From NCBI RefSeq assembly GCF_022045235.1, contig NW_027266308.1:22382001-22446000 (forward strand): a DNA stretch of 64,000 bases, written 5' to 3'. This DNA is from Haliotis cracherodii (taxonomy: Eukaryota). The notes under the pieces are model-generated. The model had not been told where the DNA came from. It worked only from the letters and a program-made list of their open reading frames with translations, and made no database searches. How positions within the stretch are numbered: position 1 is the stretch's first letter; each line of letters starts with the position of its first letter. The translations under genes and the position numbers were made by a program. Below are positions 20,418 to 60,600 of this stretch, piece by piece.

Positions 20418-23400
20418 ATGGAGGACGAACCGCTACTACCGTCCCATGACGGGGAAAGCCGTAGCGGAGAGAAATCCATCGTCAAGAATCTCCTTTTTCT
20501 TAATTTGGTGATGTTCATATTAACGCTTTCAGGCAGCCTATTTATGCCTGTGATGAGTCAGTATTTGTACCATCGTGTATCAGAGGATGTATTCAACCAC
20601 ACTCTTGTCAACATGACCACAACACAACCCTGTTACCGGAACACCTCGAGCCCCGATTATATGCTGCAGGAGAAGGCTCAGCAGGTCACTGCTGAAAAAC
20701 AATTGCAATTCACGATGTTGAAAAGTGCCCTGGCTATCTTCAGTAACATCATGCTGGGTGCTTATTCCGATTCTATTGGTCGAAAGTTCCTGTTTGTTAC
20801 GCCAATGACAGGGCAACTGATAAGAAGCGCCTTCACAACAGTTATCATAGGATGTAGGCTGGACTTGAACTTGTTCTTCCTGTCTGAAGGCATAGATGGT
20901 CTCCTGGGAAGTTATTACGGCATCCTACTCGCGTCCTATACATACACCGCCGATAACACGCCGGCTACAGGTTCCCGTACCATCGGCATCGCTGTCGTCG
21001 ACCTCACCGAGTTCCTAGCCACCTCTCTCATCTCCATAGCCAGCGGATACTTCATCCAGGATGTGAACTTCTTCTACCCAGCTCTCACTGCCACGCTGGT
21101 GTGCATGGTGGCCCTCCTCATAGTCACACTATTCCTTCCGACAAGCACATATCATGTTAGAGATACGGGCTCGACATGTATGAATCCAGTGGAAGGTCTG
21201 AAAAGAGTGTTTGGGTTTTATGTTTTCGACAACAGCGCCTTAAAGAAAGCGTGTTTCATCCTTATTTTGCTTTCCTTTGTGTTTAATGTCATCAGTTCTG
21301 TTGGAGGCTCCAACATCGACACTTTGTTTCTCCTGAATGCACCGTTTTGCTGGACTCCAGAGAAACTTGCATATTACGTCACAGCCTTCACTGTGTTATG
21401 TCCGCTGATAGGAGTGCCCTTAACCAGGCTGTTTCAAGTGTGCCTGATTGACGAGATCATTGCCGTGATTGCAACATCTGCAACCGTCGCAAGCGATGTC
21501 ATACACTCATTTGCGTCGACGGACACCATGATGTATATAGGTGAGTGTCGATTTAATCACGGTTATGCTATTAGAAGTGGTCTTATTATGATAATGACTA
21601 TTATGCCGTATTTTTGACGTCCACCGACGTTGTATTGCTGAAATATTTTTTAAAAACTCACTCACGCACTATAAGTGCAGTAAAGAGTTAAGAAAAACGC
21701 TGATTCCTTAGGGTTCGTTCAGTTGTAGCCTACACAACGAATCAATCAATGTGTGATAAATATTACAACACTGACTATATACAGTGCATACACTTGTTGC
21801 AGTCGTCGGGGTGACGTCAATCGGCAGCACGCTTTCAGGGATCACCCGAGCCATCATGTCCCGCATGGCGCCACCCAACAGACAAGGTAAGACACACCAT
21901 GAGACCGACAGTACTGAAACAGGTCACTGTTCGTCAGTATAGCTGTACTATTGCTACAGGTCACTGTTCGTCAGTATAGCTGTACTATTGCTACAGGTCA
22001 CTGTTCGCCAGTATAGCTGTACTATTGCTACAGGTCACTGTTCATCAGTATAGCTGTACTATTGTTACATGTCATTGTTCGCCAGTATAGCTATACTATT
22101 GTTACATGTCACTGTTCGCCAGCATCGCTGTACCATTGTTACATATTCCCTGTCAGTCAGTATAGCTTTGCTATTGTTTCATGTTCTTAGTTTGTCAATA
22201 TTGCTTTACTATTGTTACATGTTCCTAGTTCGCCTGTAGAGCTGTATTATTGTTCCAGGGTCACTGTTCGCCAGTATAGCTGTATTATTGTTTAAGGGTC
22301 ACTGTTCGCCAGTATAGCTGTATTATTGTTCCAGGGTCACTGTTCGCCAGTATAGCTGTACTATTGTTTAAGGGTCACTGTTCGCCTGCATAGCTGTACT
22401 ATTGTTCCAGGGTCACTGTTCGCCAGTATAGTTGTATTATTGTTCCAGGGTCACTGTTCGCCAGTATAGCTGTACTATTGTTCCAGGGTCACTGTTCGCC
22501 AGTATAGCTGTATTATTGTTCCAGGGTCACTGTTCGCCAGTATAGCTGTACTATTGTTCCAGGGTCACTGTTCGCCAGTATAGCTGTACTATTGTTCCAG
22601 GGTCACTGTTCGCCTGTATAGCTGTACTATTGTTCCAGGGTCACTGTTCGCCAGTATCGCGGTGGTGGAGACGATCTGCTCCCTGGTTGGCTCTCCCTTG
22701 TTCAGCAGGGTCTACCAGGGCACGGTTGTCATTTGGCGAGGCCTGGTCTTCATTGTCATGGCTGGAATGCATGTTGTCGCTGCCGTCATTCTCGTGTAAG
22801 TATCTCAAAATGTCAGCTACTTACGAACAAAGTAAAACTAATTATGTAATGTGCAAGTGAATATCGATAAACGCCGCACCAGCAACATTACAGCTACATT
22901 CGCGGAAACTTGACATATGTCATAATTTGAAGAAATTATTACAGCTACACTCGCGGAAACTTGACATATGTCATAATGTAAAGAGATTATTACAGCTACA
23001 TTCGCGGAAACTTGACATATGTCATAATGTAAAGAGATTATTACAGCTACATTCGCGGAAACTTGACATATGTCATAATGTAAAGAGATAATTATTGCTA
23101 CTCTCGCGGAAACTTGACATATGTCATAATGTAAAGATATTATTACAGCTACACTCGCGGAAACTTGACATATGTCATCATGTAAAGAGATTATTACAGC
23201 TACATTCGCGGAAACTTGACATATGTCATAATGTAAAGAGATTATTACAGCTACACTTGCGGAAACTTGACATATGTCATAATGTAAAGAGATTATTACA
23301 GCTACATTCGCGGAAACTTGACATATGTCATAATGTAAAGAGATAATTACAGCTACACTCGCGGAAACTTGACATATGTTATAATGTAAAGAGATTATTA

Positions 23401-24273
23401 CAGCTACACTCGCGGAAACTTGACATATGTCATAATGTAAAGATATTATTACAGCTACTCTCGCGGAAACTTGACATATGTCATCATGTAAAGAGATTAT
23501 TACAGCTACATTCGCGGAAACTTGACATATGTCATAATGTAAAGAGATTATTACAGCTACACTCGCGACAGGTTGACATATGTCATAATGTAAAGAGATT
23601 ATTACAGCTACACTTGCGGAAATTTGACATATGTCATCATGTAAAGAGATTATTACAGCTACACTCGCGGAAACTTGACATATGTCATAATGTAAAGAGA
23701 TTATTACAGCTACACTAGCGGAAACTTGACATATGTCATAATGTAAAGAGATTATTACAGCTACACTCGCGGAAACTTAACATATGTCATCATGTAAAGA
23801 GATAATTACAGCTACACTTGCGGAAACTTGACATATGTCATAATGTAAAGAGATTATTACAGCTACACTCGCGGAAATTTGACATATGTCATAATGTAAA
23901 GAGATTATTACAGCTACATTCGCGGAAACTTGACATATGTCATAATGTAAAGAGATAATCATTTTTACAGCTACACTTTCGGGAACTTGTCATATGTCAT
24001 AATGTATTTAGATATGGATACAATAAAGTACGATGCCTTTTAACACAAAACAATCAGCATCAATTTGAAATGTTGCCCACATATACAAATGTGAACTTTC
24101 AAAGGAATCAAACAAAGATTATCATATTACGAAATGATAAGATATAGAAATATATAACAAATGCCAATATCTCTCCCAGGGTATTCATCTTTGTATCTCG
24201 GCCAGTGAGGGAAGAACAGAAGAGGATCAGGGCATTGAATGTTCAGGAGACGGAGGAGGACACGAGGAGCTAA
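20418..24273 (+). CDS. SLC46-family MFS transporter, paralog 3 (~485 aa); exons 20418-21540, 21803-21886, 22639-22795, 24180-24273
   Basis: MEDEPLL, GAYSDSIGRK, TYTADNTP, PFCWT; GT-AG junctions; 84/157-bp exons; open to TAA. Confidence 0.9.
21919..22660 (+). repeat. Tandem array (~20 x 37-38 bp) of the intron 2 acceptor plus exon 3 start of paralog 3
   Basis: Unit TACTATTGTTCCAG|GGTCACTGTTCGCCAGTATAGCTG; the last copy is the real exon 3 start (GSLFASIA). Confidence 0.95.
22887..24005. repeat. 51-bp minisatellite, ~22 units, in paralog 3 intron 3
   Basis: Unit ATTATTACAGCTACACTCGCGGAAACTTGACATATGTCATAATGTAAAGAG; 17-aa period in the ORF track. Confidence 0.95.
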
Positions 24274-24545
24274 TCCAACAGGTCATCCAGTGCTGGAAGA
24301 GATCGGAAATTCTGACAAATTATGAGGCACGCGTGACTCATAAGAGATACCGCATTTCGCTGTTCAGAGTTGTGTTCTTTAGGCTTGCGAGAACCCTATG
24401 ATCATGGGTTCGAATCTCAGATACGCCCTAATTATGTTTATGGTTTGTCAGCATCATACCCGTGCTTGTGAATTTCAAATAAGTGGTAGACATCTTAGAT
24501 CTGCGTGGATTTTCCTCCCACCTAAAGCTGACACCCTGTTATATA

Positions 24546-25451
24546 TACAATCGAACCTCGCTTGTCCGGACACTTGCGTTTTCTCAAATAATGTCCGGAT
24601 TATACGAGTTTCGATTGCCATATAATAATCAAACCACAACAAATATCACTATGAACGAGTCAGAATTTGGCATTTATTATATATGTATCCATTTTATGAC
24701 GTTGTTTCAAGGCGTGAATAACGGTAGTCTGACCACGATTCTATAAATATTGGTGCGATCTGCCAATCAGTTCACACACGATTTGTCCGAAAGTAATACA
24801 CTGTGATCCCACATGACACCAGCCCCTTTGACGTCGGAGGCGGGACGGTGAATTGCAAAACAAACATAATCAAGAGTGGTCAGGGGCGGTTAAGTAGCTT
24901 AGTGGTCAAAGCGTTGGCTCGTCACGACGAAGGCCTGGGTTTGATTCCCTACGTCAATTATTAAACCTCATTTCTGGTGTCCCCCGCCGTGATCTTGCTG
25001 GAATATTGCTAACGGCGACGTAAATCCACACTCACCCAAGAGTGGTCGCTGTCCGGTAAGTGGGACACAATGGTGTGTATTTTCACTGTTGGCAGTTGTG
25101 ACCCCGAGGAGAAAACAGACCTCAAGGGTGCCAGGATTAAATTGTGCGATGACGTCATAAAGACGTTTGACGTCAACTTACTTCAGTGAAGATCGATATG
25201 TGTGATGTTTCCCCTTCATAAATATGAATTGAAGCTTGTGAATTGTATTTTTGTGTTCCGAAGGTGCTGTAGTTTTAAAATAAAATTAAAAGTCAAAATG
25301 TGATTTTTCACCCATAAGGTCCCTTATCTCATGGTTGGTCACAATTGCATTTCACTTTCCGAGTAAATGAAGCATTTTATGTAGTATAGATCGTTTCACG
25401 TAAATACCGTCTCCGGACATGTGTGGTCCGGCTAAGTGGGACTTCACTGTA
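24546..25451. mobile_element. Degenerate TA-flanked Tc1/mariner-type MITE; homologous copy at ~32272-33356
   Basis: Ends TACAATCGAACCTCGCTTGTCCGGAC / GTCCGGCTAAGTGGGACTTCACTGTA are imperfect inverted repeats. Confidence 0.5.
24882..25036 (+). mobile_element. Short tRNA-derived SINE
   Basis: 11-bp TSD CAAGAGTGGTC (24871-24881, 25037-25047); A box TAGCTTAGTGG and B box GGTTTGATTCC; empty site in the homologous block at ~33110-33150. Confidence 0.85.
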
Positions 25452-26796
25452 ATTGATATATAATATTCAATGCGGTGTTCAATCAAACGCACTCATTCAC
25501 TGCATAAAAGTTGTTACCAGAATCATTGTCTCTTTCAAGTTGAACGCTTTCATCAACTTATAATATGAGGTGTTCAATAAAATAAATTCACAAATTTTAA
25601 CTCAAAATACAAACTTTTGAGTGAGTGGGATAAAATTTAACATCGCATTTTATACAAATGTTCACAGTATTCAGGTGAAGTTATTTTCCTCTGTGATATA
25701 CATGGCTGCGTGGAAACATTACGAAGGGCTTTCATAAGGTCAAGAGATGTTTTTGCTTGATCATTCTTATTATTTTCACGTACATATGATTGTATTCAGA
25801 ACACTAAAATAAAGACACTTTTATTACGGGTAGCCTTATTTGTGTTAAGAAAAAGGAAATTGCAAGTGAAAATTACAAACAATTGACAAGGACATGACGT
25901 TATAGGTTTATTGTTTTATGGTCGAATCTGGTTTGTTTGAAGAGCGAATATGCTAATCACACAAGTTCCCGTCTTCCTGAATATGTTTTGTATGTGGGAG
26001 AATAAGGAATATGTAATACGTGACAATTGAACAAAGAATCTGCATGCTTCTTTTTCATAGCAGCTTTTTACTCCTGAATCCGCTGTTCAGAGTTGCAACC
26101 CGTCTCCACATCCCTTCTCCCGTTCGAATCTCACATTCGCCTTGATTATGTTTCTTAAAAAGGTTGTTTTTTTTATCTACCTCATGGGTTTCAGCAATGT
26201 GTTACACGTTCAAACTTGCATCTCACCGAGCTTTCCATCCACATCAAGCTGACACGACCTGACCAAGCTCAACGCGAATGTCGAAGCTTGTTAACTTGTT
26301 AACTTCGGTGGCACAATATTACCAAGTAGATGCCACGCATTCATCTGGATGTGTCACAGATTCAGGACAAACCCATACACTTACCCAACTCAACATTTCA
26401 ACTCTTCAAATTCCTGTTCGGTGTAGCCTTTATACAGCATGGGGTGTAAATACGATATGCGGAAGGAACGCTGGTTTTACACGCTACTGTCTCTTCCTCG
26501 TCCTAGCTGTACGGTCATAAAGATATCAAGATAATGAATCACACACATTCCTCGTTACGGCTTGATTGTTTTCCTCAAAGAGGTCAATGCTATAATTATC
26601 ACAAAGGATCGTTTACATGTGTAGGAGGGTTCACAATTTGGCCGCTATATCTAATGGGTTATCTTCAGCCATGGCAGTGCAAGGCTGAAAGTTGATCAAG
26701 TTATGTTATCCAGGAATGTCCATGTGATGTTATATCATGTGACAAAATTGATGTTGATATCACAGGTAGTGTAGCGAGCACTTCATAACATACAAC

Positions 26797-29700: not shown

Positions 29701-30130
29701 AGGGTCCATTCCAGGCGTGTTTCATTCTGCATAACGTTTTATCACATTAAGCATTTATTGATTTAGGGTATAACCCATAATTTCAGATCAACTATTCGGA
29801 TCAAGTGTTATCACCGATATATGTTTCATGTGAGTAATCCCCCGAAAGAATGCAAATGTCACGCCTATTCTTTGTTTCAGAATCTATATATTCGTGTCAA
29901 AACCGATCAGACAGAAGCGCGATGTTCAGCAGCTTCAAGCAGGTGTTCCAAACGTTCAGCGCGGGGCTACAGTGTACCAGACAGAAGTAACCGAGGATCC
30001 AACAATGCACGTGCATGGGCGGTCGGTGGCAGGCCAGGAGGTGACAGATGTCACCCAGGCCAGCATACACGTGCATGTTCAGTCAGCGTATGGCGAAGCG
30101 GATGGACAGTATATCAAAACAGAGGAGTAG
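26797..30130 (+). CDS. SLC46-family MFS transporter, paralog 4 (~539 aa); exons 26797-27925, 28237-28320, 28803-28959, 29881-30130
   Basis: METEPLL, GSYSDSIGRK, AYAADNTP, PFCWT; GT-AG junctions; open to TAG. Confidence 0.92.
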
Positions 30131-31859: not shown

Positions 31860-32225
31860 TAAGTTATATAATGCATATAACCTTCACCTCAGACGTTGTG
31901 TATTGGACATGACCTTCACGTCATAAATAGGTTATAATCGACATAACCTTCACGTCACTTGTTGTATATTGAATACAACCTTCACGTCACTTAAGGTATA
32001 ATTGATTTTACCTTCACGCCACAAATATATTATAATGGACAAAACCTTCACTTCACCAAAGGTATAATGGACATAACCTTCCCGTCGGTATTTGTATATT
32101 GCATATTAACCTCCACGTATGTATTATGGATATAACCTTGACGTCACAAATTGTATAACTGATATCTACTTTACGTCAGACATGGCATAATTGATCTAAA
32201 AATGACGTCGCAAATGGTATAGGAA
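31860..32225 (+). repeat. Degenerate 32-bp minisatellite (ATAACCTTCACGTCACAAATGGTATAATGGAT)
   Basis: Same family as 42880-44230, 53040-53600 and the inverted block 54080-54260. Confidence 0.8.
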
Positions 32226-34502: not shown

Positions 34503-34535
<33 letters not shown>

Positions 34536-34542
<7 letters not shown>

Positions 34543-35775
34543 GGCCAAAAGAAACGTTACCAACATTAACTGATTTGCTACTTTGAAACAAAGATGCTAA
34601 CCTGTTCAAAAACAGTAAAGAGAAAGGTTGCCATTAACATGAATTGCTCCAAGATGACCATTACCAGACTGGTCGCACGTCTCCGGCTGACTGGCAGAAC
34701 CGCAGACAGACCACGGAGTGGCAGACCAAAGGTCACGACCCCGCAGGATGACCGCTTTTTACGGGTACTTCATCTGAGGAACAGATTTCTTACTGTGACG
34801 TCATCAGCTGCCAACAGCTTAGGACATCCGGTCAGCAGACAAACAGTGACCAGACGACTACGACATTATGGTCTCGGGGCTTATCGCCCTTTCAAGGGCA
34901 TGACCTTGACCCGTCAACATCGACGTGCCAAATTGACATGGTGCAGGCAAACTCAGCGATGGCAACAAAGGGAATGGCGGCGAGTGCTGTTTAGTGCTCT
35001 TCAAACCTGATGGGCGGACGCGAGTTTATCGACTACGTGGTGAACATACGGCTCCTTGTTGTGTCCAGGAGGTGGATGGTGTGATGGTCTGGGGCGGCAT
35101 TTGCGGGGACGAGAAGACGGAACTTGTCATCATCGAAGGCAATCTGACAGCACAACGCTACATTGACAATATCTTACGGCCAGTGGTTCTTCCTTTCATC
35201 CAGCGTCAACAACGGACGGTGTCCCAACAAGATAACGCCAGACCCCATAAATCCCGTATTACTAGAGACTTCCTCAACGCCAACAACGTGACTCTCCTGC
35301 CGTGGCCAGCTCGATCACCAGATCTGTCACCCATAGAACATCTCTGGGACAAGCTGGGGCGTCGTCTTCGGAAACGTCAACATCCTCCCTTCACGAAACA
35401 AGCGTTGATCGTTGCCCTCCGTGAGTAATGGAATCGGATACCTGCAGAGGATGTGAGGACGCTTGTCTACTCAGTTCGACGCCGCATTCGAAGATGCATT
35501 GCCGCTCATGGAGGTCATATCCCGTATTGAACGGTCTGGTCCGTCGTCACCTTAAAGTTGTAACCAATGTTGTTGATCGAATACTGGACGAATGACCCCT
35601 TGTCAATAAATGTCCCTGTTGGAGGTCAAGGACTTTGTTGTTGAATTAGTAAATTCGCATTTTACTGTTCTGAATGATGAATTTCTACAATACAATTGTT
35701 ATTGCTGGTTCAAATTGTGTTGGTCATATTCTATCCTAGAAATATCGTTGGTAACGTTTCGTTTGGCCGTCAGTA
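34536..35775 (+). mobile_element. Second Tc1 transposon, 5'-internally deleted and degraded, inside (TA)n runs
   Basis: ~29-bp TIRs ACTGA(G/C)GGCCAAA(A/C)GAAACGTTACCAAC. Transposase pieces 34594-35010 and 34994-35428 contain RPRSGRP, VMVWGGI, QQDNARPH and SPDLSPIEH, with a frameshift and a premature stop. Confidence 0.9.
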
Positions 35776-35779
35776 TATA

Positions 35780-35810
<31 letters not shown>

Positions 35811-36191
35811 ATATATAGATATCCAGAATAAGTAAGTGGCTTTTTGTTCAATCTGAACCAATAGAAACCAATCGTTGCAGGTTCCCTGAAAGCAAGCATA
35901 CACACGTATTTTCACACGTACAGGTTATATGTATGCCCATATCAAAATGAGCCCGTGGAGACTCGGGTGGGATGGGCTCCGAAAACTTTATTGCTTAAGC
36001 TCCTATGCAGATACATTTAACTGCCATCGTAACCGACAAGTGCTTATTCTCTCAATCACTGGTTTGTCTTACTATTGCCAACTAATTTACCGGCCATCGT
36101 GGTTTAGCTGGAATATTGCTGACCGCAGTGTGAAGCAATATAATTTTAAAAAATACACATCTATGTACATAGCTGTACCATATTGTTGCAG

Positions 36192-37593
36192 GTTCCCTCT
36201 TCGCCAGTGTAGCGGTGGTGGAGACGATGTGCTCGCTGGTGGGGACTCCTATCTTCAGCAGCATTTACCAGGACACGGTCGTGTTGTGGAGAGGGATGGT
36301 CTTCATCTTCTTGGGAGGCACACATGTTGTCGGTGCTATTGTTCTTGTGTGAGTATTTTATGCACTTCTTTGTCCATATTCAATCAATTATTTCTCGTTT
36401 ATTTCGTCATCTGATGTTTGATTGAGAAGGATGTTTACGCAGTTTTAATAATACCCTACCCATGACAATTCTTGGTACGAATAAAATCACCAGCATAATT
36501 TGCTGATCGTAAGAGGCGACAAAATGGGTCGAGTTGTCAGGAACGGTGATGTGCTTCATTGCGTGTCATCGAACCCCGACGGCGTGGAAAGTCGCTCACA
36601 ATATCAATCACTGGATTATCTGGACTTTACAGGCCGCCGTCATACAGCTGGAATATTTCAAACAAACAATATTGCTGTCATATCAGCCAAACTTTTAACC
36701 ACTAGGCTACTCGATCTCTCAATTCAGGAGATGAACGATACATACTGGTACATGAGGTTTCCAGGGAACGACTTCTTCTGTCATCATCAACCCGCATCCT
36801 GGACCAGAAAGGGGAAAACATCGTTACAAATAATATATATACTTTTCACTTGCGATATACAATTGGCTACTGAACACATATTTTACCTGTGTAATTCCAG
36901 TCGCGAAGGTGCACGAGCATGGGTTAAAATGTCAAATAATCACAACATGGTCTGCTCCCTTGTTATGAATCTAGGTGAAATACATGAAGGTCAATAAACT
37001 TGTACCGGAAAGTGAATAACTGAATTCAAATGCAGGGCGCGTTCTAGGTATGTATCGTTGTTCGTGAGAGTTTATCACATTACACTTTAATCCGTTAGAG
37101 CATAATTCATACTTACAAAGCAAATGTCACCAGTGAATGAATGTTTCAGGCTCTGCAAATGATCATTTTACAAACTGTGCGGAACATAAAGACCTATATA
37201 TAATTGTAAATAATAAATATTCTCTGTGCGGACTACACAAAGTATTAACACTGATATATTTTCACTGGGTAATCCCAAAAGGATGCAATTGTCACGCCTA
37301 TTCTTTGTTGCAGGATCTATATATTCTTGTCAAAACCAATCAGACATAACGCCGATGTTCCGCAGGCTTCGCGCGATGTTCAACAGGTTCAACCAGGTGT
37401 TCCACATGTTCAGCACGTGGTCACAGTGCACAAAGGGACACAGACAGACATAACCGGAGATCCAACAATGCACGAGCATGCGCGGTCGGTGGCAGGCCAG
37501 GAGGTGGCAGAGATCACCCAGGCCAGCATACACGTGCACGTTCAGTCGGCGTATGGCGAAGAGGATGGACACTATATTAAAACAGAGGAGTAG
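36192..37593 (+). pseudogene. SLC46 paralog 5: only exon 3 (36192-36348) and exon 4 (37314-37593) present
   Basis: Very similar to paralog 6 exons 3-4, with intact splice sites and frame; no exon 1 or 2 upstream. Confidence 0.85.
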
Positions 37594-38945
37594 TTGATTT
37601 TCATGACGCCGGTAACAGGCTTGCCTACGTCAAACGTGGAAATAATGATCCCATTTGACCACTGAGCTCAGTGACAGACATATATTATCTCAAAGTGCTT
37701 TCATTATTTGTTTGTTATGCATGATGCATTCCGATGAATGACTATTCAATGATNNNNNNNNNNNNNNNNNNNNNNNNNNNNNNNNNNNNNNNNNNNNNNN
37801 NNNNNNNNNNNNNNNNNNNNNNNNNNNNNNNNNNNNNNNNNNNNNNNNNNNNNNNNNNNNNNNNNNNNNNNNNNNNNNNNNNNNNNNNNNNNNAATGCTT
37901 TATGCCGAAGCGCGTATTGGTTTTTTACTTTTCTGATTTATTTTGTCGTCGTGGTTTCTGGCTGCGATCTGTCGAATCCTTAGGCCGGAAAATCAAAACG
38001 TTTCACATTACTATGGGAACCAGAACACTGATGTTCAGCAAACGAAATCTAAACCTTGGGGAAAAGTAAACTGCCATTTCAACTGAACGCCCAGAACAAT
38101 ACATCTGGGTATTACGTTCAGTCTCCTTCAACGCTTATGGTAGTTTTTCAACATGAAATGAAATATTTATCTATAAACACAATATCGTGTTTAGTGATAA
38201 CGTGATAACGTCAAGACGCCATTATCAACATAATAGTAAAAGATCGTAACACGGCTAGTCTACAACAATTTACTTAAGATCTAGACCCAAAGTGCCGTTT
38301 CTACTTTCTCCGTTACTTCAATACAACCTAACCCGATATCCTAGCAACATTTCCAAAACATTAGATCACTTATCATTACTTACCAGAAACATTAGAATTC
38401 CCCAATTAACTGATAGTGTTTTCATTCGTTACGGTAACCGGAGTTATCTCCCTTAGACTGTAAGTGCATGTCGCAAACATGTGAAAGGACTCCTTCTCAA
38501 TGGACTCGGCATTCAGCATGTATTTCTTTGGAATTTGTCGGTTTTATTTATCCTGATAATTTTTTACTTCCATTTTCCTGTTTTATGCAATCTGAAAGAA
38601 ATTTTTGAGAGCAAAAACTACCTCAATACAATAAATGAGAGTGGTGAGAGAACATCATTATATTTTGTACATTGCTTTATTTATTTTACTTCGTCCAGCG
38701 GTTATATGTATATTTAATTACCTTATTGCTCTTTACAGATTTTACATTGCAAGAAGCCAGATGAATATATCTCCTTAACAAATTAAAGATAAAAGATAAA
38801 TATAGAAGTGAAGATACCTCATTTGAGTCAATCTTTGCCTTTTGATGTATGTAAATTACGCATTTATCAAGTATATAGACACAACACTAGTAACTCCAAA
38901 TTCCTTAGATATACAGGAGAAATGTAATAAGTTCTATTATGGATA

Positions 38946-42834: not shown

Positions 42835-42879
42835 TAACTCCTAATTCCTTATATATACAGGAGAAATATAATAAGTTCT

Positions 42880-44230
42880 ATAATGGATATAACCTTCACG
42901 TCAGACAATGTGTAATGGATATAACCTTAACGTCATACATTCTATAACAGATATAATCTTCATGTCACAAATGGTATAATGGACATAAAATTCACGTCGG
43001 AAATAGAATAATTGCCATAACCTTCACGTCACAAATTGTATATTTGATACAACCGTAACGTCACAAATGGCATACATGTATTGACGTAACAGATGATCTG
43101 ACGGACATAACCTTCACATCAGAGTTGAGGAGAGGTAAATTGGGTTTAACGTCGCAATCAAGATTAATGCACTGACATAGCGACATAGGCGGACGTTCTA
43201 CCATTAGACCACGAAGACGGTCTTCACATCAGTAGTCGTATAACTGACGTTAACCGCCACGTCACACATGGTATATTGGATCTAACTTTCACGTTATAAG
43301 TTGAATGATGGATATAACCTCGACGTCACGAATTGCACAATTGATATAAACTTTACGTCATACGTGATAAAATGGATCTAATCTTCACGTCGCAAATTGT
43401 ATAATGGATATACCTTTCACGTCAGAAGTTGTATGAAAGATATAACCTTCACGTTACAAATGGTATAATGGGCATAACACACACATCACAAATAGTGTAA
43501 TGGATCTAAGCTTTATGTCACAAATGGCATAATGGGTATAACCCGTACGTCACAAATAGTGTAATGGGTCAAACCTTTATGTCACAAATGGTATTATGGG
43601 TATTACCCGCACATCACAAATGATATAATTGGTAGAACCCGCACATCACAAATGGTACAATGGGTATAACCAGCACATCACCAATGGTATAATGGGTATA
43701 ACCTTCAATTTACAAATGGTATAATGGAGATACAAACCATTATGTCACAAATGGTATTGTGGGTATAACCCGCACGTCACAAATGGTATAATGGATATAA
43801 CCTGCACATCACAAATGGTATAATGGGTATAACCCGCACATCACAAATGGTATAATGGGTATAACCTGCACATCACAAATGGTATAATGGGTATAACCCG
43901 CACATCACAAATGTTATTAAGGGTATAACCGGCACATCACAAATGGTGTAATGGATCTAACCATTGTGTCACAAATGGTATAATGGGTATAACCTGCACA
44001 TCACAAATGGTATAATGGGTATAACCCGCACATCACAAATGGTATTAAGGGTATAATCCGCACATCACAAATGGTGTAATGGATCTAACCATTGTGTCAC
44101 AAATGGTATAATGGGTATAACCCGCACATCACAAATGGTATATTATATATAACCTTCAATTTACAAATGGTATAATGGAGATAACCATCGCGTCCCAAAT
44201 ACACTTTCACGAACATAAGCTCCACGTCAT
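42880..44230 (+). repeat. 32-bp minisatellite, ~38 units, most homogeneous at 43600-44150
   Basis: Unit ACAAATGGTATAATGGGTATAACCCGCACATC. Confidence 0.9.
43123..43221 (-). mobile_element. 99-bp internally deleted tRNA-type SINE inside the minisatellite
   Basis: 11-bp TSD CTTCACATCAG (43112-43122, 43222-43232); head GTGGTCTAATGGTAGAACG. Confidence 0.7.
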
Positions 44231-44949
44231 ATATATATATATATATATATTTAGGAAGCCGGATGATGAATTACAAAACAAACGTATTCATGCATGGTCG
44301 CTGTCCGGTAAATGGAACACAACAGTGTGTATTTTGCATTGTTGGTAATTGAAATTCACTGTCCTTTCCGATTTACAGATAAATGAATCATTTTATGCGG
44401 CAAATTAGTATCACAATCAATGCCCCTTTCAAGCTGACCATCAATTAGTAATATGAGGCGTTTTGTATAATTACCTCTCAATTTAAAACTCAAATATCAA
44501 ACTTAAACGAAACCCTGCTGAAAAGTACGTTTGAGTGAGTGGGGTGAAATTTAACGTCGCATTTGATAGGCATNNNNNNNNNNNNNNNNNNNNNNNNNNN
44601 NNNNNNNNNNNNNNNNNNNNNNNNNNNNNNNNNNNNNNNNNNNNNNNNNNNNNNNNNNNNNNNNNNNNNNNNNNNNNNNNNNNNNNNNNNNNNNNNNNNN
44701 NNNNNNNNNNNNNNNNNNNNNNNNNNNNNNNNNNNNNNNNNNNNNNNNNNNNNNNNNNNNNNNNNNNNNNNNNNNNNNNNNNNNNNNNNNNNNNNNNAAT
44801 AAGATAGCATATGGCAATATGTAAGTTATGTTTAAATGCAGTTACTGTAGTACGTTGCCTTGCTGCAGTACCACACGAACGAACTACTCCCAATGGATAA
44901 AATAAAAATTACAACATTAAGTTGCAGAGGTTTAAATTATAAGGTAAAG

Positions 44950-53039: not shown

Positions 53040-53600
53040 GATACCGTTCCCGTCACAAATAACATTTAGTGGCTTATATCCTTCACGTCACAAATAATAT
53101 ATGGATATTTTGTTCCGTCACAAATGGAGTTTAACGATTATATCCTTCACGTCGCAAATAGTGTAATGGATATAACTTTAACGTCACAAATAGGGTAACA
53201 ATTGATATATAACTTTCCCGTCACAAATGGTACAGTTGATATATCACTTTCACGTCACATATAGTACAATGGGTATTTTGTAACGTCAATAACAAGGTAT
53301 AATGAATATATCCTTCGCGTCGCAAATAGTATACTGGATATAACTTTCACGTCACAAATAGAGCATCATGGATATATGACCTTCACGTGACAACTGGTAC
53401 AAGGGATATTTTCTTGAAGTCACAAATGGGGCATAATTATTGAATATATCCTTCGCGTCGCAAATAGTATAATGGATATAACTTTCACATCACAAACAGG
53501 GTACAATGGATATATGCCTGTCACGGCACACATTGTGAAATGGATATTTTCTTGACTTCAATAACAGGGTATAATGAATATATACTTCACGTCGCAAATA
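53040..53600 (+). repeat. Degenerate 32-33-bp minisatellite; inverted units at 54080-54260
   Basis: CTTCACGTCACAAAT cores on +; ATTTGTGACGTGAAG cores at 54132-54182. Confidence 0.8.
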
Positions 53601-53706
53601 AGGTAAATAAGTTGTCCGCGTTACGCCTTGAAACGTGTCTTCATATATCCACGACTGTAGGTGACATTTTACATTTCGTTTCGAATATCATTTTCTAAGC
53701 TTTTAA

Positions 53707-53970
53707 GGGACCGACCATTTGATATTCTGGAGGGGGTGGGAGTTCGTATCGAATATTAGATATTTTATTTTTTTCAGCTACAGCTACAAAACCAGATATT
53801 GTTTTATTTGCAACTCTGGCCATGAATTTCTTTTCAACAGTTTGAAGTATAATAATATTTTTTTTTTGGAATTTTCTGGGACAATTTTTGTTTGCGATAA
53901 AAACCCAGACCCACACACCCCGACCCGTACCCCAACCACAACCCCATGAGAATATCAAATTGTCGGTCCC
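53707..53970. mobile_element. 264-bp MITE, possibly PIF/Harbinger-type
   Basis: 22-bp TIRs GGGACCGAC(C/A)ATTTGATATTCT; flanks TAA / GAA (imperfect 3-bp TSD). Confidence 0.75.
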
Positions 53971-54603
53971 GAAGAACTGCTAGCATACAATTACATACTT
54001 TCACACTAATCAATCATGTGTCACCGTGGGCGATTCATTTTTGTGTGAATTTCTTTATATGTACTTCTTGTACACTCGTGAATAGTGTGACGTAAAATAT
54101 ATATACATCATACAGTTTATGTCCACTTGAGAATTTGTGACGTGAAGCTTATGGACTCCATTATACAATTTGTGACGTGAAGTTGATATCCATTATGTAA
54201 TTAACGATGTGACGTTTATGTCAATTATGCAATTTGTGACGAAAAGGTTATGTTAATTTGATTTTTTTATTGATATACGTATCTATGCTTACACTGCTAA
54301 CAACACTCCTCCCAAGAAAACTAGGACTATAGCAATATATGTATATCATTGTGGATGTTTACAGATATGATAAGCACATCGGGGTTATCAGTTATCTGTA
54401 AATCAAAGTACACACACAGCATAACGCTCTATACACCTTTTACATGAACACAGCCTAGCCACTTGGACGCCGTCCTCTATACCTTGTGTGTTAAGTTGCT
54501 GTATACGGTGATGACGTGGGTGTTCATCGTCGTTGCATGTACTTGCGACCCCATCTTCAGTGGGGCCCCGGGCTAACGAACACCCTCCCACACAACCTTT
54601 AAC

Positions 54604-57600
54604 ATGAGTGTATATGACAAGCAGACCCGTGGCCGGGGCACGGAGACGTTCCCATTGCTGCCCAAGCCTGGAGGTCAAAGCCTTAACATTCGGAATCTCG
54701 TCATAGGAAACGTCGTGGTATGTCTATATTTCATAGCAACTAATTTCCATAATCCTACAATGGACCAGTATTTATACAGACGGATGACAGAAAAGGTGTT
54801 TGGAAATGAAACTCACCATGACTCTGTTAATCAAACCTGCTATGTAAACAAGTCAGATAAACATTACCTTCTTCAGGAGAAGGCTCAGCAAATGGCATCA
54901 AGGGCACAAATGTATTTCACAGTGGCCCGGGGTATATTTGCAGTTCTGAATATCGTATTCGTTGGAGCCTATTCTGATTTTATTGGTCGGAAAGTGATGT
55001 TTGTTGTGGCCATGACAGGTTGTATAGTGAGATACTGTACACTGACCGCCATCATCTACTGGGAACTGGACTTCAACTACTACTTCATTGGGGAGATAAT
55101 CTCCGGTATAACGGGTTACGACTACTCCTTCCTCCTTGCGAGCTATGCCTACACCGCCGACAACACTCCTCCCAAGAAAACCAGGACTATAGCAATAGCC
55201 GTTCTTGAAACAACTCTGAGTCTTGCGAATGCTGCTTCCCAAACGGCAAGTGGATTCTTCATCCAGCGAACTGGATTCCTCTACCCTTCGTTCACCTCGG
55301 TCATATTGATGTTACTGGCGGTCGTGTTTGTTCTTGTGTGTGTCACGGAGACTCTGCCGCGATCAGAAGTGCAACAGAAAGAGTGTATTGGTCCCCGCAA
55401 AGGCATCAAAAGAATTGTTGGATTTTATCTATTTGATGACACCAAACAGACCCGTCTCCTGTTTATATTAGCTTTGGTGACGTACCTGTTCTTCATCTTG
55501 CCTTCGAGTGGTGTATCCAACACTGGAACGCTGTATGTGCTGAACAAACCATTCTGCTGGACTCCTGAAACGATTGGGTATTATACAATGGCGGGGACTG
55601 CGCTGAAGCAGGTGTTTGGTGTGCCGCTCATTAAGTTCCTCCAACACTGTATCAGTGATGAGATCATTGGAATAGCCAGCTCTTTCGTGATGGTGGCAGC
55701 GTATACTCTCCGTGGGCTGGCGTACACAGACTGGATGATGTATGGGGGTAAGATGCAGGAGAAACATCATCACATGATAATGGATGAACAATCTTTTAAA
55801 ACAAATTCCCCAAATGTAAATCCAACTTGATTTGGGGCAAAGTAGATCACTAGAGTCGTCTTATATCATGCTCATGTGATCATAATATGTGAGCGTGTGT
55901 TTAATCGCTGCTCATTCTATCAAACACTAGAATCCAAGATTTATCTTCGATTCACCAGGCCGACGTGTAATGGCTAAGATATCGCTGACTTTGACATAAA
56001 ACCAACATTCACTCACTGACCTCAAATGCATACCTTAATAAGGAAAACCTCATACTGGTAACATAATGTTAATGTGGTTGTGATAAAGAATTTTTTAAAT
56101 CAGTTGCAGGACTGGAGGCTTTCACGTTTGCGATTTCCCCGACGGTTCGAGCCATCATGTCCAGAATGTCACCAAAAGACAGACAAGGTATTAATCATCA
56201 AAAGTACTGAAATACAACATTGTTAAGTATGTCTATCTTCGAATTCTATCAAAGATATGGTATTGTGAAGAGGCATCAGCATATTCAAATACCTAACAAG
56301 TACCCATACCATACCCCCAATGCTTATCAGAAGAACCTTCTTAAGTGGGGATTCAGTTGTTACAGTAACCTTATTGACCCTGACTAAGGTCACGTGGATC
56401 GCATTATTGGCATAAACTACTTGATTGTAAAGCTATTCACATGCCGCAGTGATAAAGCAAGGATATTGCTGACTTCGGGGCAAATCAACTTTCACTAAAC
56501 GTACATGTACTTGGACATGTATGTAAAATCATAGGAAATGTTGTTTTTTTATTTGATGTTAATGTCACTGATACTTAGCCACAACTAGAGTCTTTGATAC
56601 AATTATTTGTTTGATTTGTGCTTTCTTGGTTTTTTGTCTTGTGACAGGTTCTCTCTTCACGTGTCTGATGCTGATAGGGAGAGTGCTTACATATTCATGT
56701 CTTGTGACAGGTTCTCTCTTCACCTGTCTGATGCTGATAGGGAGAGTGCTTACATGTTCATATCTTGTGACAGCTCTCTCTTCACCTGTCTGATGCTGAT
56801 AGGGAGAGTCCTTACATGTTCATGTCTTGTGACAGGTTCTCTCTTCACGTGTCTGATGCTGGTACGGAGAGTCCTTACATGTTCATGTCTTGTGACAGTT
56901 TCTCCCTTCATCTGTCTGATGCTGGTAGGGAGGGTCCTTACATGTTCATGTCTTGTGACATGTTCTCTCTTCACCTGTCTGATGCTGATAGGGAGAGTGC
57001 TTACATATTCATGTCTTGTGACAGGTTCTCTCTTCACCTGTCTGGTGCTGATAGGGAGAGTGCTTACATGGTCATGTCTTGTGACAGGTTCTCTCTTCAC
57101 CTGTCTGATGCTGATAGGGAGAGTGCTTACATTTTCATGTCTTGTGACAGGTTCTCTCTTCACGTGTCTGATGCTGATAGGGAGAGTGCTTACATGGTCA
57201 TGTCTTGTGACAGGTTCTCTCTTCACCTGTCTGATGCTGATAGGGAGAGTGCTTACATTTTCATGTCTTGTGACAGGTTCTCTCTTCACGTGTCTGATGC
57301 TGATAGGGAGAGTCCTTACATGTTCATATCTTGTGACAGGTTCTCTCTTCACCTGTCTGATGCTGATAGGGAGAGTGCTTACATTTTCATGTCTTGTGAC
57401 AGGTTCTCTCTTCGTGTGTCTGATGCTGATAGGGAGAGTGCTTATATGTTCATGTCTTGTGACAGGTTCTCCCTTCACGTGTCTGATGCTGATACGGAGA
57501 GTGCTTACATATTCATGTCTTGTGACAGTTTCTCTCTTCACGTTTCTGATGCTGGTACGGAGAGTGCTTACATGGTCATATCTTCGGAAAGAGACGCCAA

Positions 57601-60600
57601 GCCGCAAAGACCTAGCACCACAGACATGGAAACTGATAACCCAGGTGTCCTCAATACATTGTTTCGCAATTATATCTCCCTGATACACACTGATACTTTT
57701 GATAACAATAACAAGTATAACAGTACATAACAGTATAACAGTCCAGATCCCTGATGGTTAATTCTGACTCTAACGCCGATAGACAAGGGCAACACTATGT
57801 TTGTTTATAAGCACTGAAAATAATACTTTCCTAACATTTCATATTTTCATCTTTATCCGATAGGACCCCTACGGATACCGTTTTCAATATGTCAGCTTTA
57901 TTTAGCCAAAAACAATACTCATAAATGACAGGTTCTCACTTCTTGAATGGTTACATCATAGGACAGCTTCTATATAGGTTAAGTCTTCTGTCAGGTCCTC
58001 CCTTGGTTATATCTTCTGTCAGGTTCTCTCTTGGTTATATCTTCTGTCAAGTTCACTCTTGGTTATATATTCTGTCAGGTCCTCTCTTGGTTATATCTTC
58101 TGTCAGGTTCTCTCTTGGTTATATCTTCTGTCAAGTTCACTCTTGGTTATATATTCTGTCAGGTCCTCTCTTGGTTATATCTTCTGTCAGGTCCTCTCTT
58201 GCTTATATCTTCAGTCAGGTCCTCTCTTGGTTATATCTTCTGTCAGGATCTCTCTTGGTTATATCTTCTGTCAGATCCTCTCTTGGTTATATCTTCTGTC
58301 AAGTTCACTCTTGGTTATATATTCTGTCAGGCCCTCTCTTGGTTATATCTTCTGTCAGGTTCTCTCTTGGTCATATCTTCTGTCAGGTTCTTTCTTGGTT
58401 ATATCTTCTGTCAGGTCCTCTCTTGGGTATATCTTCTGTCAGGTACTCTCTTGGGTATATCTTCTATCAGGTTCTATATTTGTTACATCTTCTGTCAGGT
58501 TCTTTCTTGGTTATATCTTCTGTCAGGTTCTCTCTTGGGTATATCTTCTGTCAGGTTCTCTCATGGGTATATCTTCTGTCAGATTCTTTCTTGGTTATAT
58601 CTTCTGCCAGGTTCTCTCTTGGTTATATCTTCTGTCAGGTTCTCTCTTGGTAATATCTTCTGTCAGGTTCTCTCACGGTTATATCTTCAGTCAGGTTCTT
58701 TCTTGGTTATATATTCTGTCAGGTCCTCTCTTGGTTATATCTTCTGTCGTGTTCTCTTTTGGGTATATCTTCTGTCAGGTTCTCTCTTGGTTATATCATG
58801 TCAGGTTCTTTCTTAGTTATATCTTCTGTCAGGTTCTTTCTTGGTTATATCTTCTGTCAGGTTCTCTCTTGGGTATATCTTCTGTCAGGTTCTTTCTTGG
58901 TTATATATTCTGTCAGGTCCTCTCTTGGTTATATCTTCTGTCATGTTCACTCTTGGTCATATCTTCTGTCAGGTTCTTTCTTGGTTATATATTCTGTCAG
59001 GTCCTCTCTTGGTTATATCTTCTGTCATGTTCACTCTTGGTCATATCTTCTGTCAGGTTCTTTCTTGGTTATATCTTCTGTCAGGTCCTCTCTTGGTTAT
59101 ATCTTCAGTCAGGTCCTCTCTTGGTTATATCTTCTGTCAGGATCTCTCTTGGTTATATCTTCTGTCAGATCCTCTCTTGGTTATATCTTCTGTCAAGTTC
59201 ACTCTTGGTTATATATTCTGTCAGGCCCTCTCTTGGTTATATCTTCTGTCAGGTTCTCTCTTGGTCATATCTTCTGTCAGGTTCTTTCTTGGTTATATCT
59301 TCTGTCAGGTCCTCTCTTGGGTATATCTTCTGTCAGGTACTCTCTTGGGTATATCTTCTATCAGGTTCTATATTTGTTACATCTTCTGTCAGGTTCTTTC
59401 TTGGTTATATCTTCTGTCAGGTTCTCTCTTGGGTATATCTTCTGTCAGGTTCTCTCATGGGTATATCTTCTGTCAGATTCTTTCTTGGTTATATCTTCTG
59501 CCAGGTTCTCTCTTGGTTATATCTTCTGTCAGGTTCTCTCTTGGTAATATCTTCTGTCAGGTTCTCTCACGGTTATATCTTCAGTCAGGTTCTTTCTTGG
59601 TTATATATTCTGTCAGGTCCTCTCTTGGTTATATCTTCTGTTGTGTTCTCTTTTGGGTATATCTTCTGTCAGGTTCTCTCTTGGTTATATCATCTGTTAG
59701 GTTCTTTCTTGGTTATATCTTCTGTCAGGTTCTTTCTTGGTTATATCTTCTGTCAGGTTCTCTCTTGGTTATATCTTCTGTCAGGTTCTTTCTTGGTTAT
59801 ATATTCTGTCAGGTCCTCTCTTGGTTATATCTTCTGTCATGTTCACTCTTGGTCATATCTTCTGTCAGGTTCTTTCTTGGTTATATCTTCTGTCAGGTTC
59901 TCTCTTGGTTATATCTTCTGTCAAGTTCACTCGTGGTTATATCTTCTGCCAGATCCTCTCTTGGTTATATCTTCTGTCAGGTTCTCTCTTGGTTATATCT
60001 TCTGTCAGGTCCTCTGTTGGTAATATCATCTGACAGGTTCTCTCTTGGTTTTATCTTCTGTCAAAGTCTCTCTTGGTTATATCATCTGTCAGGTTCTCTC
60101 TTGGTTATATCTTCTGTCAGGTTCACTCTTGGTTATATCTTTTGTCAGGTTCACTCTTGGTTTTATCTTCTGTCAGGTTCTCTCTTGGGTATATCTTCTG
60201 TCAGGTTCACTCTTGGTTTTATCTTCTGTCAGGTTCTCTCTTCACGAGTCTGATGCTGGTTCAGGCAGTGTGTACCCTGTTGGGAACCCCGGTGTTCAAC
60301 TCCCTATACCAGGCCACTGTTGAGGTGATGCGAGGGAGTGTCTATCTCGTCATGGCTGGTCTACAACTGCTCTCTGTCACTGTGTTCATGTGCGTATACA
60401 CCAAAGCACTGCCCAGCACCTGAACCCAATGTTAAAAAAGACTATTGCACAAGCTATAATGAACTAAGCCTTGAGGGTAATATACCACAGAAAAACAGAT
60501 GAGGAACATAATAATCCTCTCCACATAAGTATAAGCGACAACACCCTTTCCATAATCATTAGAAATCCCTGCTGTCCATTCTACGATTCCAAACATTTTA

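What the first reader, a model, noticed from the sequence alone, without database searches (positions are those of the whole stretch)
21887..60389. The same 3' splice site is repeatedly amplified into tandem acceptor arrays in different SLC46 paralogs
Seen: three arrays with different unit lengths (37/38 bp in paralog 3; 63 bp and 28 bp in paralog 7) all consist of the pyrimidine tract + AG of intron 2 joined to the first 10-28 nt of exon 3 (GSLF...). The 38- and 28-bp arrays end precisely at the real exon. Exon 3 is preceded by ~19 copies of its own junction in paralog 3 and ~95 in paralog 7, most retaining the AG. Each array matches its own gene's junction, so they arose independently. No other junction in the cluster shows this. 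Inference: this may be a copy-number-tunable splicing control (decoy acceptors feeding NMD, exon definition forcing the last AG, or recursive splicing through AG|GT units). It could instead be a neutral slippage hotspot.
Basis: partly seen in the sequence, partly recalled or inferred. Interest (0 to 1): 0.92.

Follow-up and report, generated by a model that had tools for sequence, protein, structure and literature searches.

The report
Splice-junction minisatellites in abalone transporter genes
Two abalone transporter genes carry long tandem arrays made of copies of their own intron-end/exon-start junction, a known kind of repeat ("mirage" minisatellite, described in amphioxus). It also occurs at other junctions and in an unrelated gene of this genome, and in the one case I could test the gene is still spliced normally.

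Summary
Three tandem arrays (38 bp x19.5; 63 bp x15; 28 bp x81) sit in the homologous intron 2 of two SLC46/PCFT-like paralogs of black abalone (Haliotis cracherodii). Their units are the acceptor plus the first 10-43 nt of exon 3. The units occur nowhere else in the 1.18-Gb assembly. For paralog 3, independent DNA runs support the array.

In paralog 3, transcript contigs from two abalone species join exon 2 to the terminal AG only, and every AG-bearing decoy would give a premature stop. The phenomenon is neither specific to this junction nor to SLC46. Only 2 of 38 paralogs have it at exon 3. Another paralog lineage has the same kind of array at the exon 4 acceptor. MNAT1, 11.8 Mb away, has 22 copies of its own acceptor junction.

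These are "mirage" minisatellites, already described in amphioxus and paralleled by the human F7 intron 7 VNTR. One possible by-product: the H. rufescens annotation has an isoform that reads the 63-bp array as a terminal exon of 21-aa repeats.

First-stage notes of this scan report many similar arrays in other genes of this genome; I checked only MNAT1. Enrichment over chance was not shown. New member of a known kind.

The parts
21803..21886 (+). Paralog 3 (protein P0024) exon 2; the donor GTAAGA begins at 21887
   Evidence: tblastn; spliced joints in RNA contigs X10 and X17
21922..22657 (+). Paralog 3 mirage array, 37/38-bp units x19.5, filling almost all of intron 2. It has a 5' zone of 37-bp CAG|GT units, a degenerate middle zone without AG, and a homogeneous 3' zone of ten 38-bp units (8 CAG, 2 AAG). 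The last unit is the real junction.
   Evidence: DNA contigs of X1 and X13
22639..22795 (+). Paralog 3 exon 3 (157 nt). The acceptor AG at 22637-22638 is the one used in RNA. The donor is GTAAGT at 22796.
   Evidence: joint 21886>22639 in X10 and X17, absent from DNA runs X1 and X13
56103..56187 (+). Paralog 7 (protein P0035) exon 2; the donor is GTATTA at 56188
56635..57584 (+). Paralog 7 63-bp array x15.1. Units are about 20 nt of intron plus about 43 nt of exon 3, and 13 of 15 keep CAG. In H. rufescens the orthologous array is annotated as an alternative terminal exon (isoform X1). In this reference a 1-nt deletion in unit 3 gives a stop 48 codons after the first AG.
57585..57976 (+). Non-repeated spacer between the two paralog 7 arrays, with a relic junction copy (gacag|GTTCTCACTTC) at about 57928
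57977..60242 (+). Paralog 7 28-bp array x81, ending exactly at exon 3. 71 of about 80 units keep AG. Only one decoy (pseudo-exon start 60149, +84 nt) would be in frame and stop-free.
60233..60389 (+). Paralog 7 exon 3 (157 nt), with the acceptor AG at 60231-60232
   Evidence: tblastn with P0001 and P0035; sequence

Best explanation
These are 'mirage'-type minisatellites.

Origin (inferred). A short segment spanning the intron 2/exon 3 boundary was duplicated in tandem, probably by microhomology-mediated replication slippage. It then expanded by slippage or unequal exchange.

Why it is tolerated. All extra copies lie on the intron side, and the copy continuous with the exon body stays intact. 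The spliceosome uses the exon-proximal (terminal) AG. This is shown for paralog 3 and only annotated for paralog 7. The likely reason (inferred) is that only that copy is followed by the full exon with its enhancers and a strong donor, i.e. exon definition.

Consequences. The arrays are neutral or slightly deleterious passengers that turn over quickly and evolve in concert. Occasional use of an upstream copy gives aberrant or alternative transcripts, such as the annotated H. rufescens isoform X1. The process is general in this genome. It is not a property of SLC46 or of this junction.
For: Local origin.
- Units equal the gene's own junction and are unique to their locus in the 1.18-Gb assembly.
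- The paralog 3 unit joint falls at TAT|AGC. Paralogs 4 and 6 read ...CAGTATAGC... in the exon, and paralog 6 reads tTGCTGTAC at intron position -19. That gives a 2-3 nt microhomology. The reading as microhomology is inference.

Splicing.
- Contigs from X10 (organism A) and X17 (organism B) skip 21887-22638 (GT..AG). DNA runs X1 and X13 do not.
- Proteins P0024, P0022 and P0023 carry the normal paralog 3 junction, and P0035, P0001 and P0003 the normal paralog 7 junction. P0039 (H. rufescens paralog 3) is listed as a single 485-aa protein; I did not inspect its sequence.

Generality.
- An exon 4 acceptor array is present in L022, L023 and L024 (10-11 junction copies, counting the real one) and in L012 (3 copies).
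- MNAT1 has an acceptor array of 40 bp x22.5 ending at a MAT1 RING-finger exon (E = 8e-21).

Turnover and concerted evolution.
- The 63-bp unit consensus is species-specific: GSLFTCLMLIGRVLTCSCLVT here against GSLFTCLMLVQRVLTWSYLVT in H. rufescens.
- Organism B holds paralog 3 unit variants at about 12x single-copy depth where this reference has 1-2.

Precedent. [quoted passage not shown] The human F7 intron 7 VNTR spans the donor boundary, and its pseudo-sites stay silent (PMC1557585).
Against: - Neutrality is not shown. Contigs drop rare variants, so minor decoy use followed by NMD could be hidden.
- RNA runs hold a 68-nt array unitig at 0.11 and 0.38 of exon depth. Given a genomic multiplicity of about 4.3, that is 3-9% per copy. 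It fits pre-mRNA or DNA traces but does not exclude decoy-spliced RNA.
- There is no direct RNA evidence for paralog 7.
- In the SLC46 survey, 3 independent origins among about 228 junctions is somewhat above my rough random-seeding expectation of about 0.5. Seeding may therefore not be random.
Confidence: 0.75

Rival explanations
1. Adaptive splicing control tunable by copy number. The decoy acceptors divert a share of transcripts into frameshifted, NMD-targeted products, so array length sets the output of the transporter.
For: - All 14 AG-bearing paralog 3 decoys would give a premature stop upstream of the exon 3/4 junction.
- 70 of the 71 AG-bearing decoys in the 28-bp array of paralog 7 are out of frame or hit a stop.
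- Four paralog 3 decoys are identical to the real site over -20..+3 and nine are within 2 mismatches.
- Array sequence is present at low depth in the RNA runs.
Against: - Only the terminal AG appears in assembled transcripts of two species.
- The same structures occur in an unrelated housekeeping gene (MNAT1) and at another junction.
- Only 2 of 38 paralogs carry it.
- Units and copy numbers turn over quickly between species and between duplicated genes.
- A premature stop is the default outcome of any 38- or 28-bp insertion, so it is not evidence of design.
Confidence: 0.07
2. Splice junctions are true mutational hotspots for minisatellite birth in abalone, through a sequence-driven or transcription/splicing-coupled duplication process. 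On this view junction arrays are far more common than random seeding predicts. This is compatible with the best explanation on function, but it adds a specific mechanism.
For: - Of the distinct minisatellites found in 332 kb of SLC46 loci (18 by the first filter, 20 once the L022 and L023 arrays it missed are added), 4 to 6 span an acceptor junction. They represent 3 independent origins. My rough expectation is about 0.5.
- The MNAT1 case is verified.
- Many unchecked first-stage notes describe donor and acceptor arrays in other genes of this genome.
- Pyrimidine tracts and the near-palindrome GTATAGCTGTAC at the paralog 3 unit joint (read by eye from the sequence) could plausibly favour slippage. 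This is inference.
Against: - The window was chosen because of these arrays.
- In the 31 loci chosen by homology alone, I found one independent origin among about 186 junctions, against about 0.46 expected. That is not significant.
- By my rough figures (own estimates of gene and exon numbers, about 54 arrays per Mb, and about 3.4e-4 junctions per bp), roughly a dozen chance cases would be expected in the 16 Mb scanned so far. The notes alone therefore do not show an excess.
- The unbiased sample could not be drawn.
Confidence: 0.2
3. The 63-bp array is a functional alternative last exon. It would give a transporter variant whose last two helices are replaced by hydrophobic 21-aa repeats.
For: - The H. 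rufescens RefSeq isoform X1 (P0002, XP_048258929.1) joins exon 2 to the array and reads eight in-frame repeats.
- 63 bp is a multiple of 3.
- The first unit follows a long T-rich tract.
Against: - In this H. cracherodii reference, a 1-nt deletion in unit 3 stops the frame 48 codons after the first AG.
- H. cracherodii and H. rubra have only the normal isoform in the database.
- Three of the six frames are open across the array, so the open frame is not informative.
- I could not inspect RNA support for the model.
Confidence: 0.05
4. The arrays are assembly artefacts.
For: Long tandem arrays are prone to mis-assembly. The paralog 7 arrays were not checked against reads.
Against: - Paralog 3: an independent DNA run tiles the array with depth matching the reference multiplicity, and a second species also holds it.
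- The 63-bp array is mirrored in an independent H. rufescens assembly.
- The assembly is PacBio HiFi at 37x (PMC9709981). Such reads are typically about 15 kb (my own knowledge), longer than any of the arrays.
Confidence: 0.02

Closest known systems
'Mirage' minisatellites of amphioxus (Adh3, globin BflGb6/BflGb9, troponin C, PGBD5). Sources read: Ebner et al. 2010 (PMC3087553) and PMC3902484. Canestro et al. 2002 (NAR 30:2871) is cited from them; I could not read it.
   Same: - Tandem repeats whose unit spans an intron/exon boundary, at acceptors or donors.
- Units of 10-160 bp, many keeping AG or GT.
- Regular splicing is not disturbed.
- Length instability and concerted evolution within the array.
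- Several genes affected in one genome.
   Different: - The host is a mollusc (gastropod), not a cephalochordate. My four topical searches of the held library found no mollusc report.
- The arrays here are much longer, up to 81 copies against 3-6 in the globins.
- One array is annotated as an alternative terminal exon in a sister species.
- Somatic instability was not tested.
Human F7 intron 7 37-bp VNTR (Borensztajn et al. 2006, PMC1557585)
   Same: A minisatellite whose terminal element spans an exon/intron boundary, leaving a row of identical pseudo splice sites. Only the exon-proximal one is normally used.
   Different: - It is a donor array with pseudo-sites downstream, and selection was shown experimentally to follow 5'-to-3' scanning.
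- Here the arrays are acceptor arrays in which the last AG is used. Simple 5'-to-3' first-come choice cannot explain that.
Intron gain by tandem duplication of an AGGT-containing segment (Rogers' model, as discussed in PMC3087553 and PMC4974935)
   Same: A tandem duplication spanning splice signals is neutralised because the outer sites are spliced together.
   Different: No new intron is created here. The copies extend an existing intron.
NAGNAG and short-distance tandem acceptors (own knowledge, not checked here)
   Same: Duplicated acceptors compete at one exon start.
   Different: Those are 3-12 nt apart, share one branch point and pyrimidine tract, and are commonly both used. Here complete acceptor regions repeat every 28-63 nt.

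Membership tests
Mirage minisatellite (tandem duplication of an intron/exon boundary) | The repeat unit contains both intron and exon sequence of one boundary | tested here: met
   Paralog 3: 19 nt of intron plus 19 nt of exon. Paralog 7: 18+10 nt and about 20+43 nt.
Mirage minisatellite (tandem duplication of an intron/exon boundary) | The authentic junction is the terminal copy and the extra copies lie in the intron | tested here: met
   The 38- and 28-bp arrays end at exon 3. The 63-bp array is displaced 2.6 kb upstream.
Mirage minisatellite (tandem duplication of an intron/exon boundary) | Regular splicing is maintained | tested here: met
   Paralog 3: the joint 21886>22639 appears in RNA contigs of two species and is absent from DNA runs. 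Paralog 7: annotation only (P0035, P0001, P0003).
Mirage minisatellite (tandem duplication of an intron/exon boundary) | Length instability and concerted evolution | tested here: met
   Species-specific unit consensus; different variant multiplicities in organism B; 10-11 against 3 junction copies among duplicated genes. Polymorphism within the species and somatic instability were not tested.
SLC46 / proton-coupled folate transporter family (MFS) | Sequence homology to SLC46A1 and an MFS fold signature | tested here: met
   7bc6 at E = 5.3e-27 and 1.5e-26. Pfam MFS_1 above its curated cut-off for three of the six exon 1 ORFs, including paralog 7; below cut-off for two; no Pfam hit for paralog 3. 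RefSeq names are SLC46A3-like.
Recursive splice sites (AG|GT ratchet points) | A 3' splice site directly followed by a functional donor consensus (GTRAGT-like) | tested here: not met
   After the decoy AGs come GTTCTC, GTCCTC, GTTCAC or GTCACT (the last read from the sequence). The real donors here are GTGAGT, GTAAGA, GTAAGT, GTATTA and GTGCGT. This is a sequence comparison only.
Regulated unproductive splicing (NMD-coupled decoy or poison sites) | Detectable use of the decoy sites, with the products stabilised when NMD is blocked | not testable with these tools
   Only assembled contigs were available, and they drop rare variants. No decoy joint was seen.

The most novel reading that the evidence does not exclude
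Abalone genomes carry hundreds of boundary-spanning minisatellites, at donors and acceptors alike, well above what random seeding predicts. That would mean splice junctions themselves, through their sequence or through transcription/splicing-coupled DNA events, trigger tandem duplication. The arrays would be a standing source of new exons, introns and isoforms, as in the H. rufescens X1 terminal exon.
Probability: 0.2. Interest if true: 0.7.

Novelty: new member of a known kind. Interest (0 to 1): 0.4.

Why it matters
- **Taxonomic reach.** Mirage minisatellites have so far been described essentially in amphioxus, and their mechanism of origin is stated to be unclear (PMC3087553). Long, clean examples in a mollusc suggest the phenomenon is wider than cephalochordates. 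This mollusc also has HiFi assemblies of several congeners and population resequencing, which gives a tractable system.
- **A natural splicing experiment.** In paralog 3, four decoy sites are identical to the real acceptor over -20..+3 and nine are within 2 mismatches, all at 38-nt spacing. Yet only the last AG appears in the assembled transcripts. This is the acceptor-side counterpart of the F7 donor model.
- **Annotation.** These arrays can generate spurious or real alternative isoforms such as X1.
- **Limits.** It does not support a dedicated regulatory device in SLC46 genes.

Tried and rejected
- **Unbiased enrichment test.** I selected 73 single-exon hits of Pkinase and Helicase_C in this genome, chosen without looking at repeats, to measure the rate of junction arrays blind. 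I did not try to obtain those letters through another tool.
- **RNA evidence for paralog 7.** Reads were laid on paralog 3. The protein database holds no transcript-derived paralog 7 protein: P0036 reads into intron 1, and P0040, the 399-aa paralog 3 Logan member, matches the length of the exon 1 ORF that runs into intron 1 (its sequence was not inspected). Both look unspliced or genomic.
- **Decoy-using paralog 3 isoforms.** A database search found none.
- **Dispersed-satellite origin.** Rejected: the units are unique to their own loci.
- **One ancient shared array in paralogs 3 and 7.** Judged unlikely. 36 other paralogs lack junction copies, and the units follow each gene's own diverged exon sequence. 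Concerted evolution with the terminal exon copy means it is not strictly excluded.
- **Open frames across the arrays as a sign of coding.** Rejected: several frames are open simply because the units lack stops.
- **Joined models.** Exons were searched one by one by reference.
- One search dropped paralog 7 through de-duplication against L009. One search used a paralog 7 exon start that was off by one (fixed). The filter missed the L022 and L023 arrays, which were found.

Full report
**What is there.** TRF reports 28 rows in the window, among them 21922-22657 (38 bp x19.5), 56635-57584 (63 bp x15.1) and 57977-60242 (28 bp x81). Using the peptides of the two exons that flank the arrays, tblastn finds seven paralogous copies of 'exon 3' and six of 'exon 2'. 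Large first-exon ORFs precede each copy. Three of the six tested score above the Pfam MFS_1 cut-off, two score below it, and paralog 3 has no Pfam hit. The paralog 3 and 7 ORFs match the proton-coupled folate transporter structure 7bc6 at E = 1.5e-26 and 5.3e-27. Database proteins identify the genome as Haliotis cracherodii. Paralog 3 is P0024, paralog 4 is P0011, paralog 7 is P0035, and an eighth paralog (P0004) starts at 63102. The window is G000:C45:22382001-22446000. Assembly size and scaffold number fit the PacBio HiFi/Omni-C black abalone assembly (PMC9709981).

**Anatomy.** In paralog 3 the intron between 21887 and 22638 is almost entirely array. Each 38-bp unit is the last 19 nt of the intron plus the first 19 nt of exon 3 (agctgtactattgttccag|GGTCACTGTTCGCCAGTAT), and the last unit runs on into the exon. 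The array has three zones:
- four 37-bp units with CAG|GT at the 5' end (AG counted by eye from the printed list);
- about six degenerate units without AG;
- ten homogeneous 38-bp units, eight with CAG and two with AAG.

Four decoys are identical to the real site over -20..+3, and nine are within 2 mismatches. Every AG-bearing decoy would give a premature stop.

In paralog 7 the 28-bp array ends exactly at exon 3 (tatcttctgtcag|GTTCTCTCTT). 71 of about 80 units keep the AG, and only one decoy (60149, +84 nt) would be in frame and stop-free. The 63-bp array lies 2.6 kb upstream of the exon. Its units hold about 43 nt of exon-derived sequence, and 13 of 15 keep CAG. The N stretches (8839-8969, 37754-37893, 44574-44797) are more than 11 kb from any array and do not affect the finding. 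I did not fill them.

**Are the arrays real and local?** Each unit matches only its own locus in the 1.18-Gb assembly. The single outside hit of the paralog 3 unit is the homologous junction of paralog 6. So these are not copies of a dispersed satellite.

For paralog 3, contigs of an independent DNA run (X1) tile the region. One is a 256-nt contig across the degenerate zone with no differences. Contig depths relative to single copy (2.5, 0.9, 0.8, 0.9, 1.15, 5.0) follow the 31-mer multiplicity in the reference (2.2, 1.1, 1.0, 1.3, 2.0, 4.3). X1 differs from the reference at four single positions, so it is not simply the same haplotype.

I did not check the two paralog 7 arrays against reads. 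The 63-bp array is corroborated by an independent H. rufescens assembly through protein P0002.

**Which acceptor is used?** No run is on record as RNA. However, the small runs X10 (organism A) and X17 (organism B, about 2-3% diverged) each contain one contig that skips 21541-21802 and 21887-22638, both GT..AG. The DNA runs X1 and X13 show neither joint. These contigs are therefore spliced transcripts, and in both species they use the terminal AG.

Each RNA run also holds a 68-nt cyclic array unitig at 0.11 or 0.38 of exon depth. Divided by its genomic multiplicity of 4.3, that is 3-9% per copy. This fits pre-mRNA or DNA traces that would fall below the assembly threshold in the single-copy intron 1. 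It neither shows nor excludes minor decoy use.

Database proteins for paralog 3 in H. cracherodii, H. rubra and H. asinina carry the normal junction. The H. rufescens ortholog P0039 is a single 485-aa entry whose sequence I did not inspect. No truncated isoform turned up.

For paralog 7, the H. cracherodii, H. rufescens (X2) and H. rubra proteins carry the normal junction. H. rufescens isoform X1 (P0002) joins exon 2 to the 63-bp array and reads eight 21-aa repeats to a stop. I could not inspect the RNA support for that model. From my own knowledge of the NCBI pipeline, alternative isoforms normally rest on transcript alignments, so this is inference. In the H. cracherodii reference, a 1-nt deletion in unit 3 would end such a product after 48 codons.

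**Is this junction special?** The genome holds about 40 exon 3 homologues, in two clusters on this chromosome plus a few singletons. I fetched 31 further loci. Searching 6 kb upstream of each acceptor for junction copies found none in 36 junctions. Only paralog 3 scored, and paralog 7 is known from the window, giving 2 of 38.

Scanning all 332 kb with TRF and mapping exons with the family proteins turned up another case. In L022, L023 and L024 (three segmental duplicates), intron 3 ends in 10-11 junction copies (counting the real one, spaced 48/56 bp) of the acceptor plus the first ~18 nt of exon 4 (tactgttacag|GGTGTT...). L012, a more distant duplicate, has 3. The family therefore has at least three independent origins, two at the exon 3 acceptor and one at the exon 4 acceptor. 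With three acceptor types, two of three events falling on the same type is expected most of the time.

First-stage notes of this scan describe similar arrays in many other genes of this genome. I tested one. At the place given for MNAT1, a 40-bp x22.5 array (L032 3843-4741, gene on the minus strand) consists of ttttcactgttgtag|ATGTGAGAGCTGTGTGGACCTGCTG. It ends at an exon that matches MAT1 residues 31-80 at E = 8e-21. The remaining notes are unchecked leads.

**Chance or hotspot?** Minisatellites (period of 10 or more, at least 4 copies) occur about once per 18 kb in the 332 kb surveyed. With units of about 45 bp and about 228 junctions, random seeding predicts roughly 0.5 junction-spanning arrays. 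I see three independent origins, but the window was picked because of two of them. In the loci chosen by homology alone the count is one origin against about 0.46 expected. Enrichment is therefore not demonstrated. The blind sample that would have settled it could not be fetched.

**Evolutionary dynamics.**
- The paralog 3 array predates the split of organisms A and B. B holds unit variants at about 12x single-copy depth where this reference has 1-2.
- The 63-bp units have species-specific consensus sequences. The H. rufescens consensus is closer to the real exon.
- The exon 4 array has 10-11 junction copies in three duplicates against 3 in L012.

These are the marks of minisatellite turnover with concerted evolution.

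The paralog 3 unit joint lies at TAT|AGC. The sister paralogs read CAGTATAGC in the exon and tTGCTGTAC at -19 in the intron. A 2-3 nt microhomology could have mediated the founding duplication. This is inference.

[quoted passage not shown] They were then found in amphioxus globin, troponin C and PGBD5 genes. They do not disturb regular splicing although many units keep AG or GT, they vary in length between haplotypes, and they evolve in concert. Their mechanism of origin is described as unclear (PMC3087553, PMC3902484). The human F7 intron 7 37-bp VNTR spans the donor boundary, and its pseudo-sites stay silent (PMC1557585). Abalone introns are known to hold polymorphic minisatellites (PMC6905558). 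I found no report of boundary-spanning ones in molluscs in the held library.

**Verdict.** The structures are mirage-type minisatellites, a new member of a known kind.

The regulatory reading has no positive support. The recursive-splicing reading is disfavoured by the sequence after the decoy AGs, which does not resemble the real donors of these genes.

The most likely mechanism is local tandem duplication and expansion. It is tolerated because the exon-proximal AG is chosen, with occasional aberrant or alternative use of upstream copies.

What remains open, and moderately interesting:
- whether such arrays are more frequent at junctions than chance predicts;
- how the spliceosome picks the last of many near-identical acceptors.

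Noticed in passing
L022 6478-7039, L023 6478-7094, L024 6477-7094, L012 about 6473-6590 (G000:C45, 62.26-62.40 Mb): An acceptor-junction array at exon 4 of another SLC46 paralog lineage. Counting the real junction, there are 10-11 junction copies in the three segmental duplicates and 3 in a more distant duplicate.
   Followed up: yes
L032 3843-4741 (-), G000:C45, about 34.225 Mb: A MNAT1 RING-finger exon is preceded by 22.5 tandem copies (40 bp) of its own acceptor plus the first 25 nt of the exon. This was a lead from note s1-826211, verified here.
   Followed up: yes
L032 1855-2851 and 4746-5108: Two more minisatellites in the neighbouring MNAT1 introns. The 33 bp x30 array ends about 16 nt upstream of the next exon's acceptor without including it. 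The 39 bp x9.3 array lies directly beside the junction array. That makes three arrays within 3.3 kb of one gene.
   Followed up: partly
window 12408-13228: A 27-bp x31 array whose unit contains an acceptor-like TTTATCATTGCAG. It lies 1.7 kb upstream of the paralog 2 start codon. No exon is evident at either end, so its origin is unexplained.
   Followed up: partly
window 22887-24006: A 51-bp x22 array fills most of intron 3 of paralog 3. It starts 91 nt after the exon 3 donor and is not junction-derived. Both introns flanking exon 3 are therefore mostly minisatellite.
   Followed up: partly
window 31867-32221, 42876-44200, 53075-53600, 54132-54258: A dispersed 32-bp repeat family (…CCTTCACGTCACAAAT…) lies upstream of several paralogs, once in inverted orientation. 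It may be carried by a mobile element.
   Followed up: no
window 34594-35428 and 36191-36349: The first exon of paralog 5 is split into two overlapping ORFs (34594-35010 and 34994-35428), and no exon 2 was detected. It is probably a pseudogene.
   Followed up: no
window 58000-60242: The 28-bp array shows higher-order periodicity. Self-matches are strongest at offsets that are multiples of 168 bp (six units).
   Followed up: no
G000:C67:7146006-7146161 and G000:C29:2174172-2174324: Two SLC46-like copies lie in open frames of 503 and 495 aa. They are probably intronless retrocopies.
   Followed up: no
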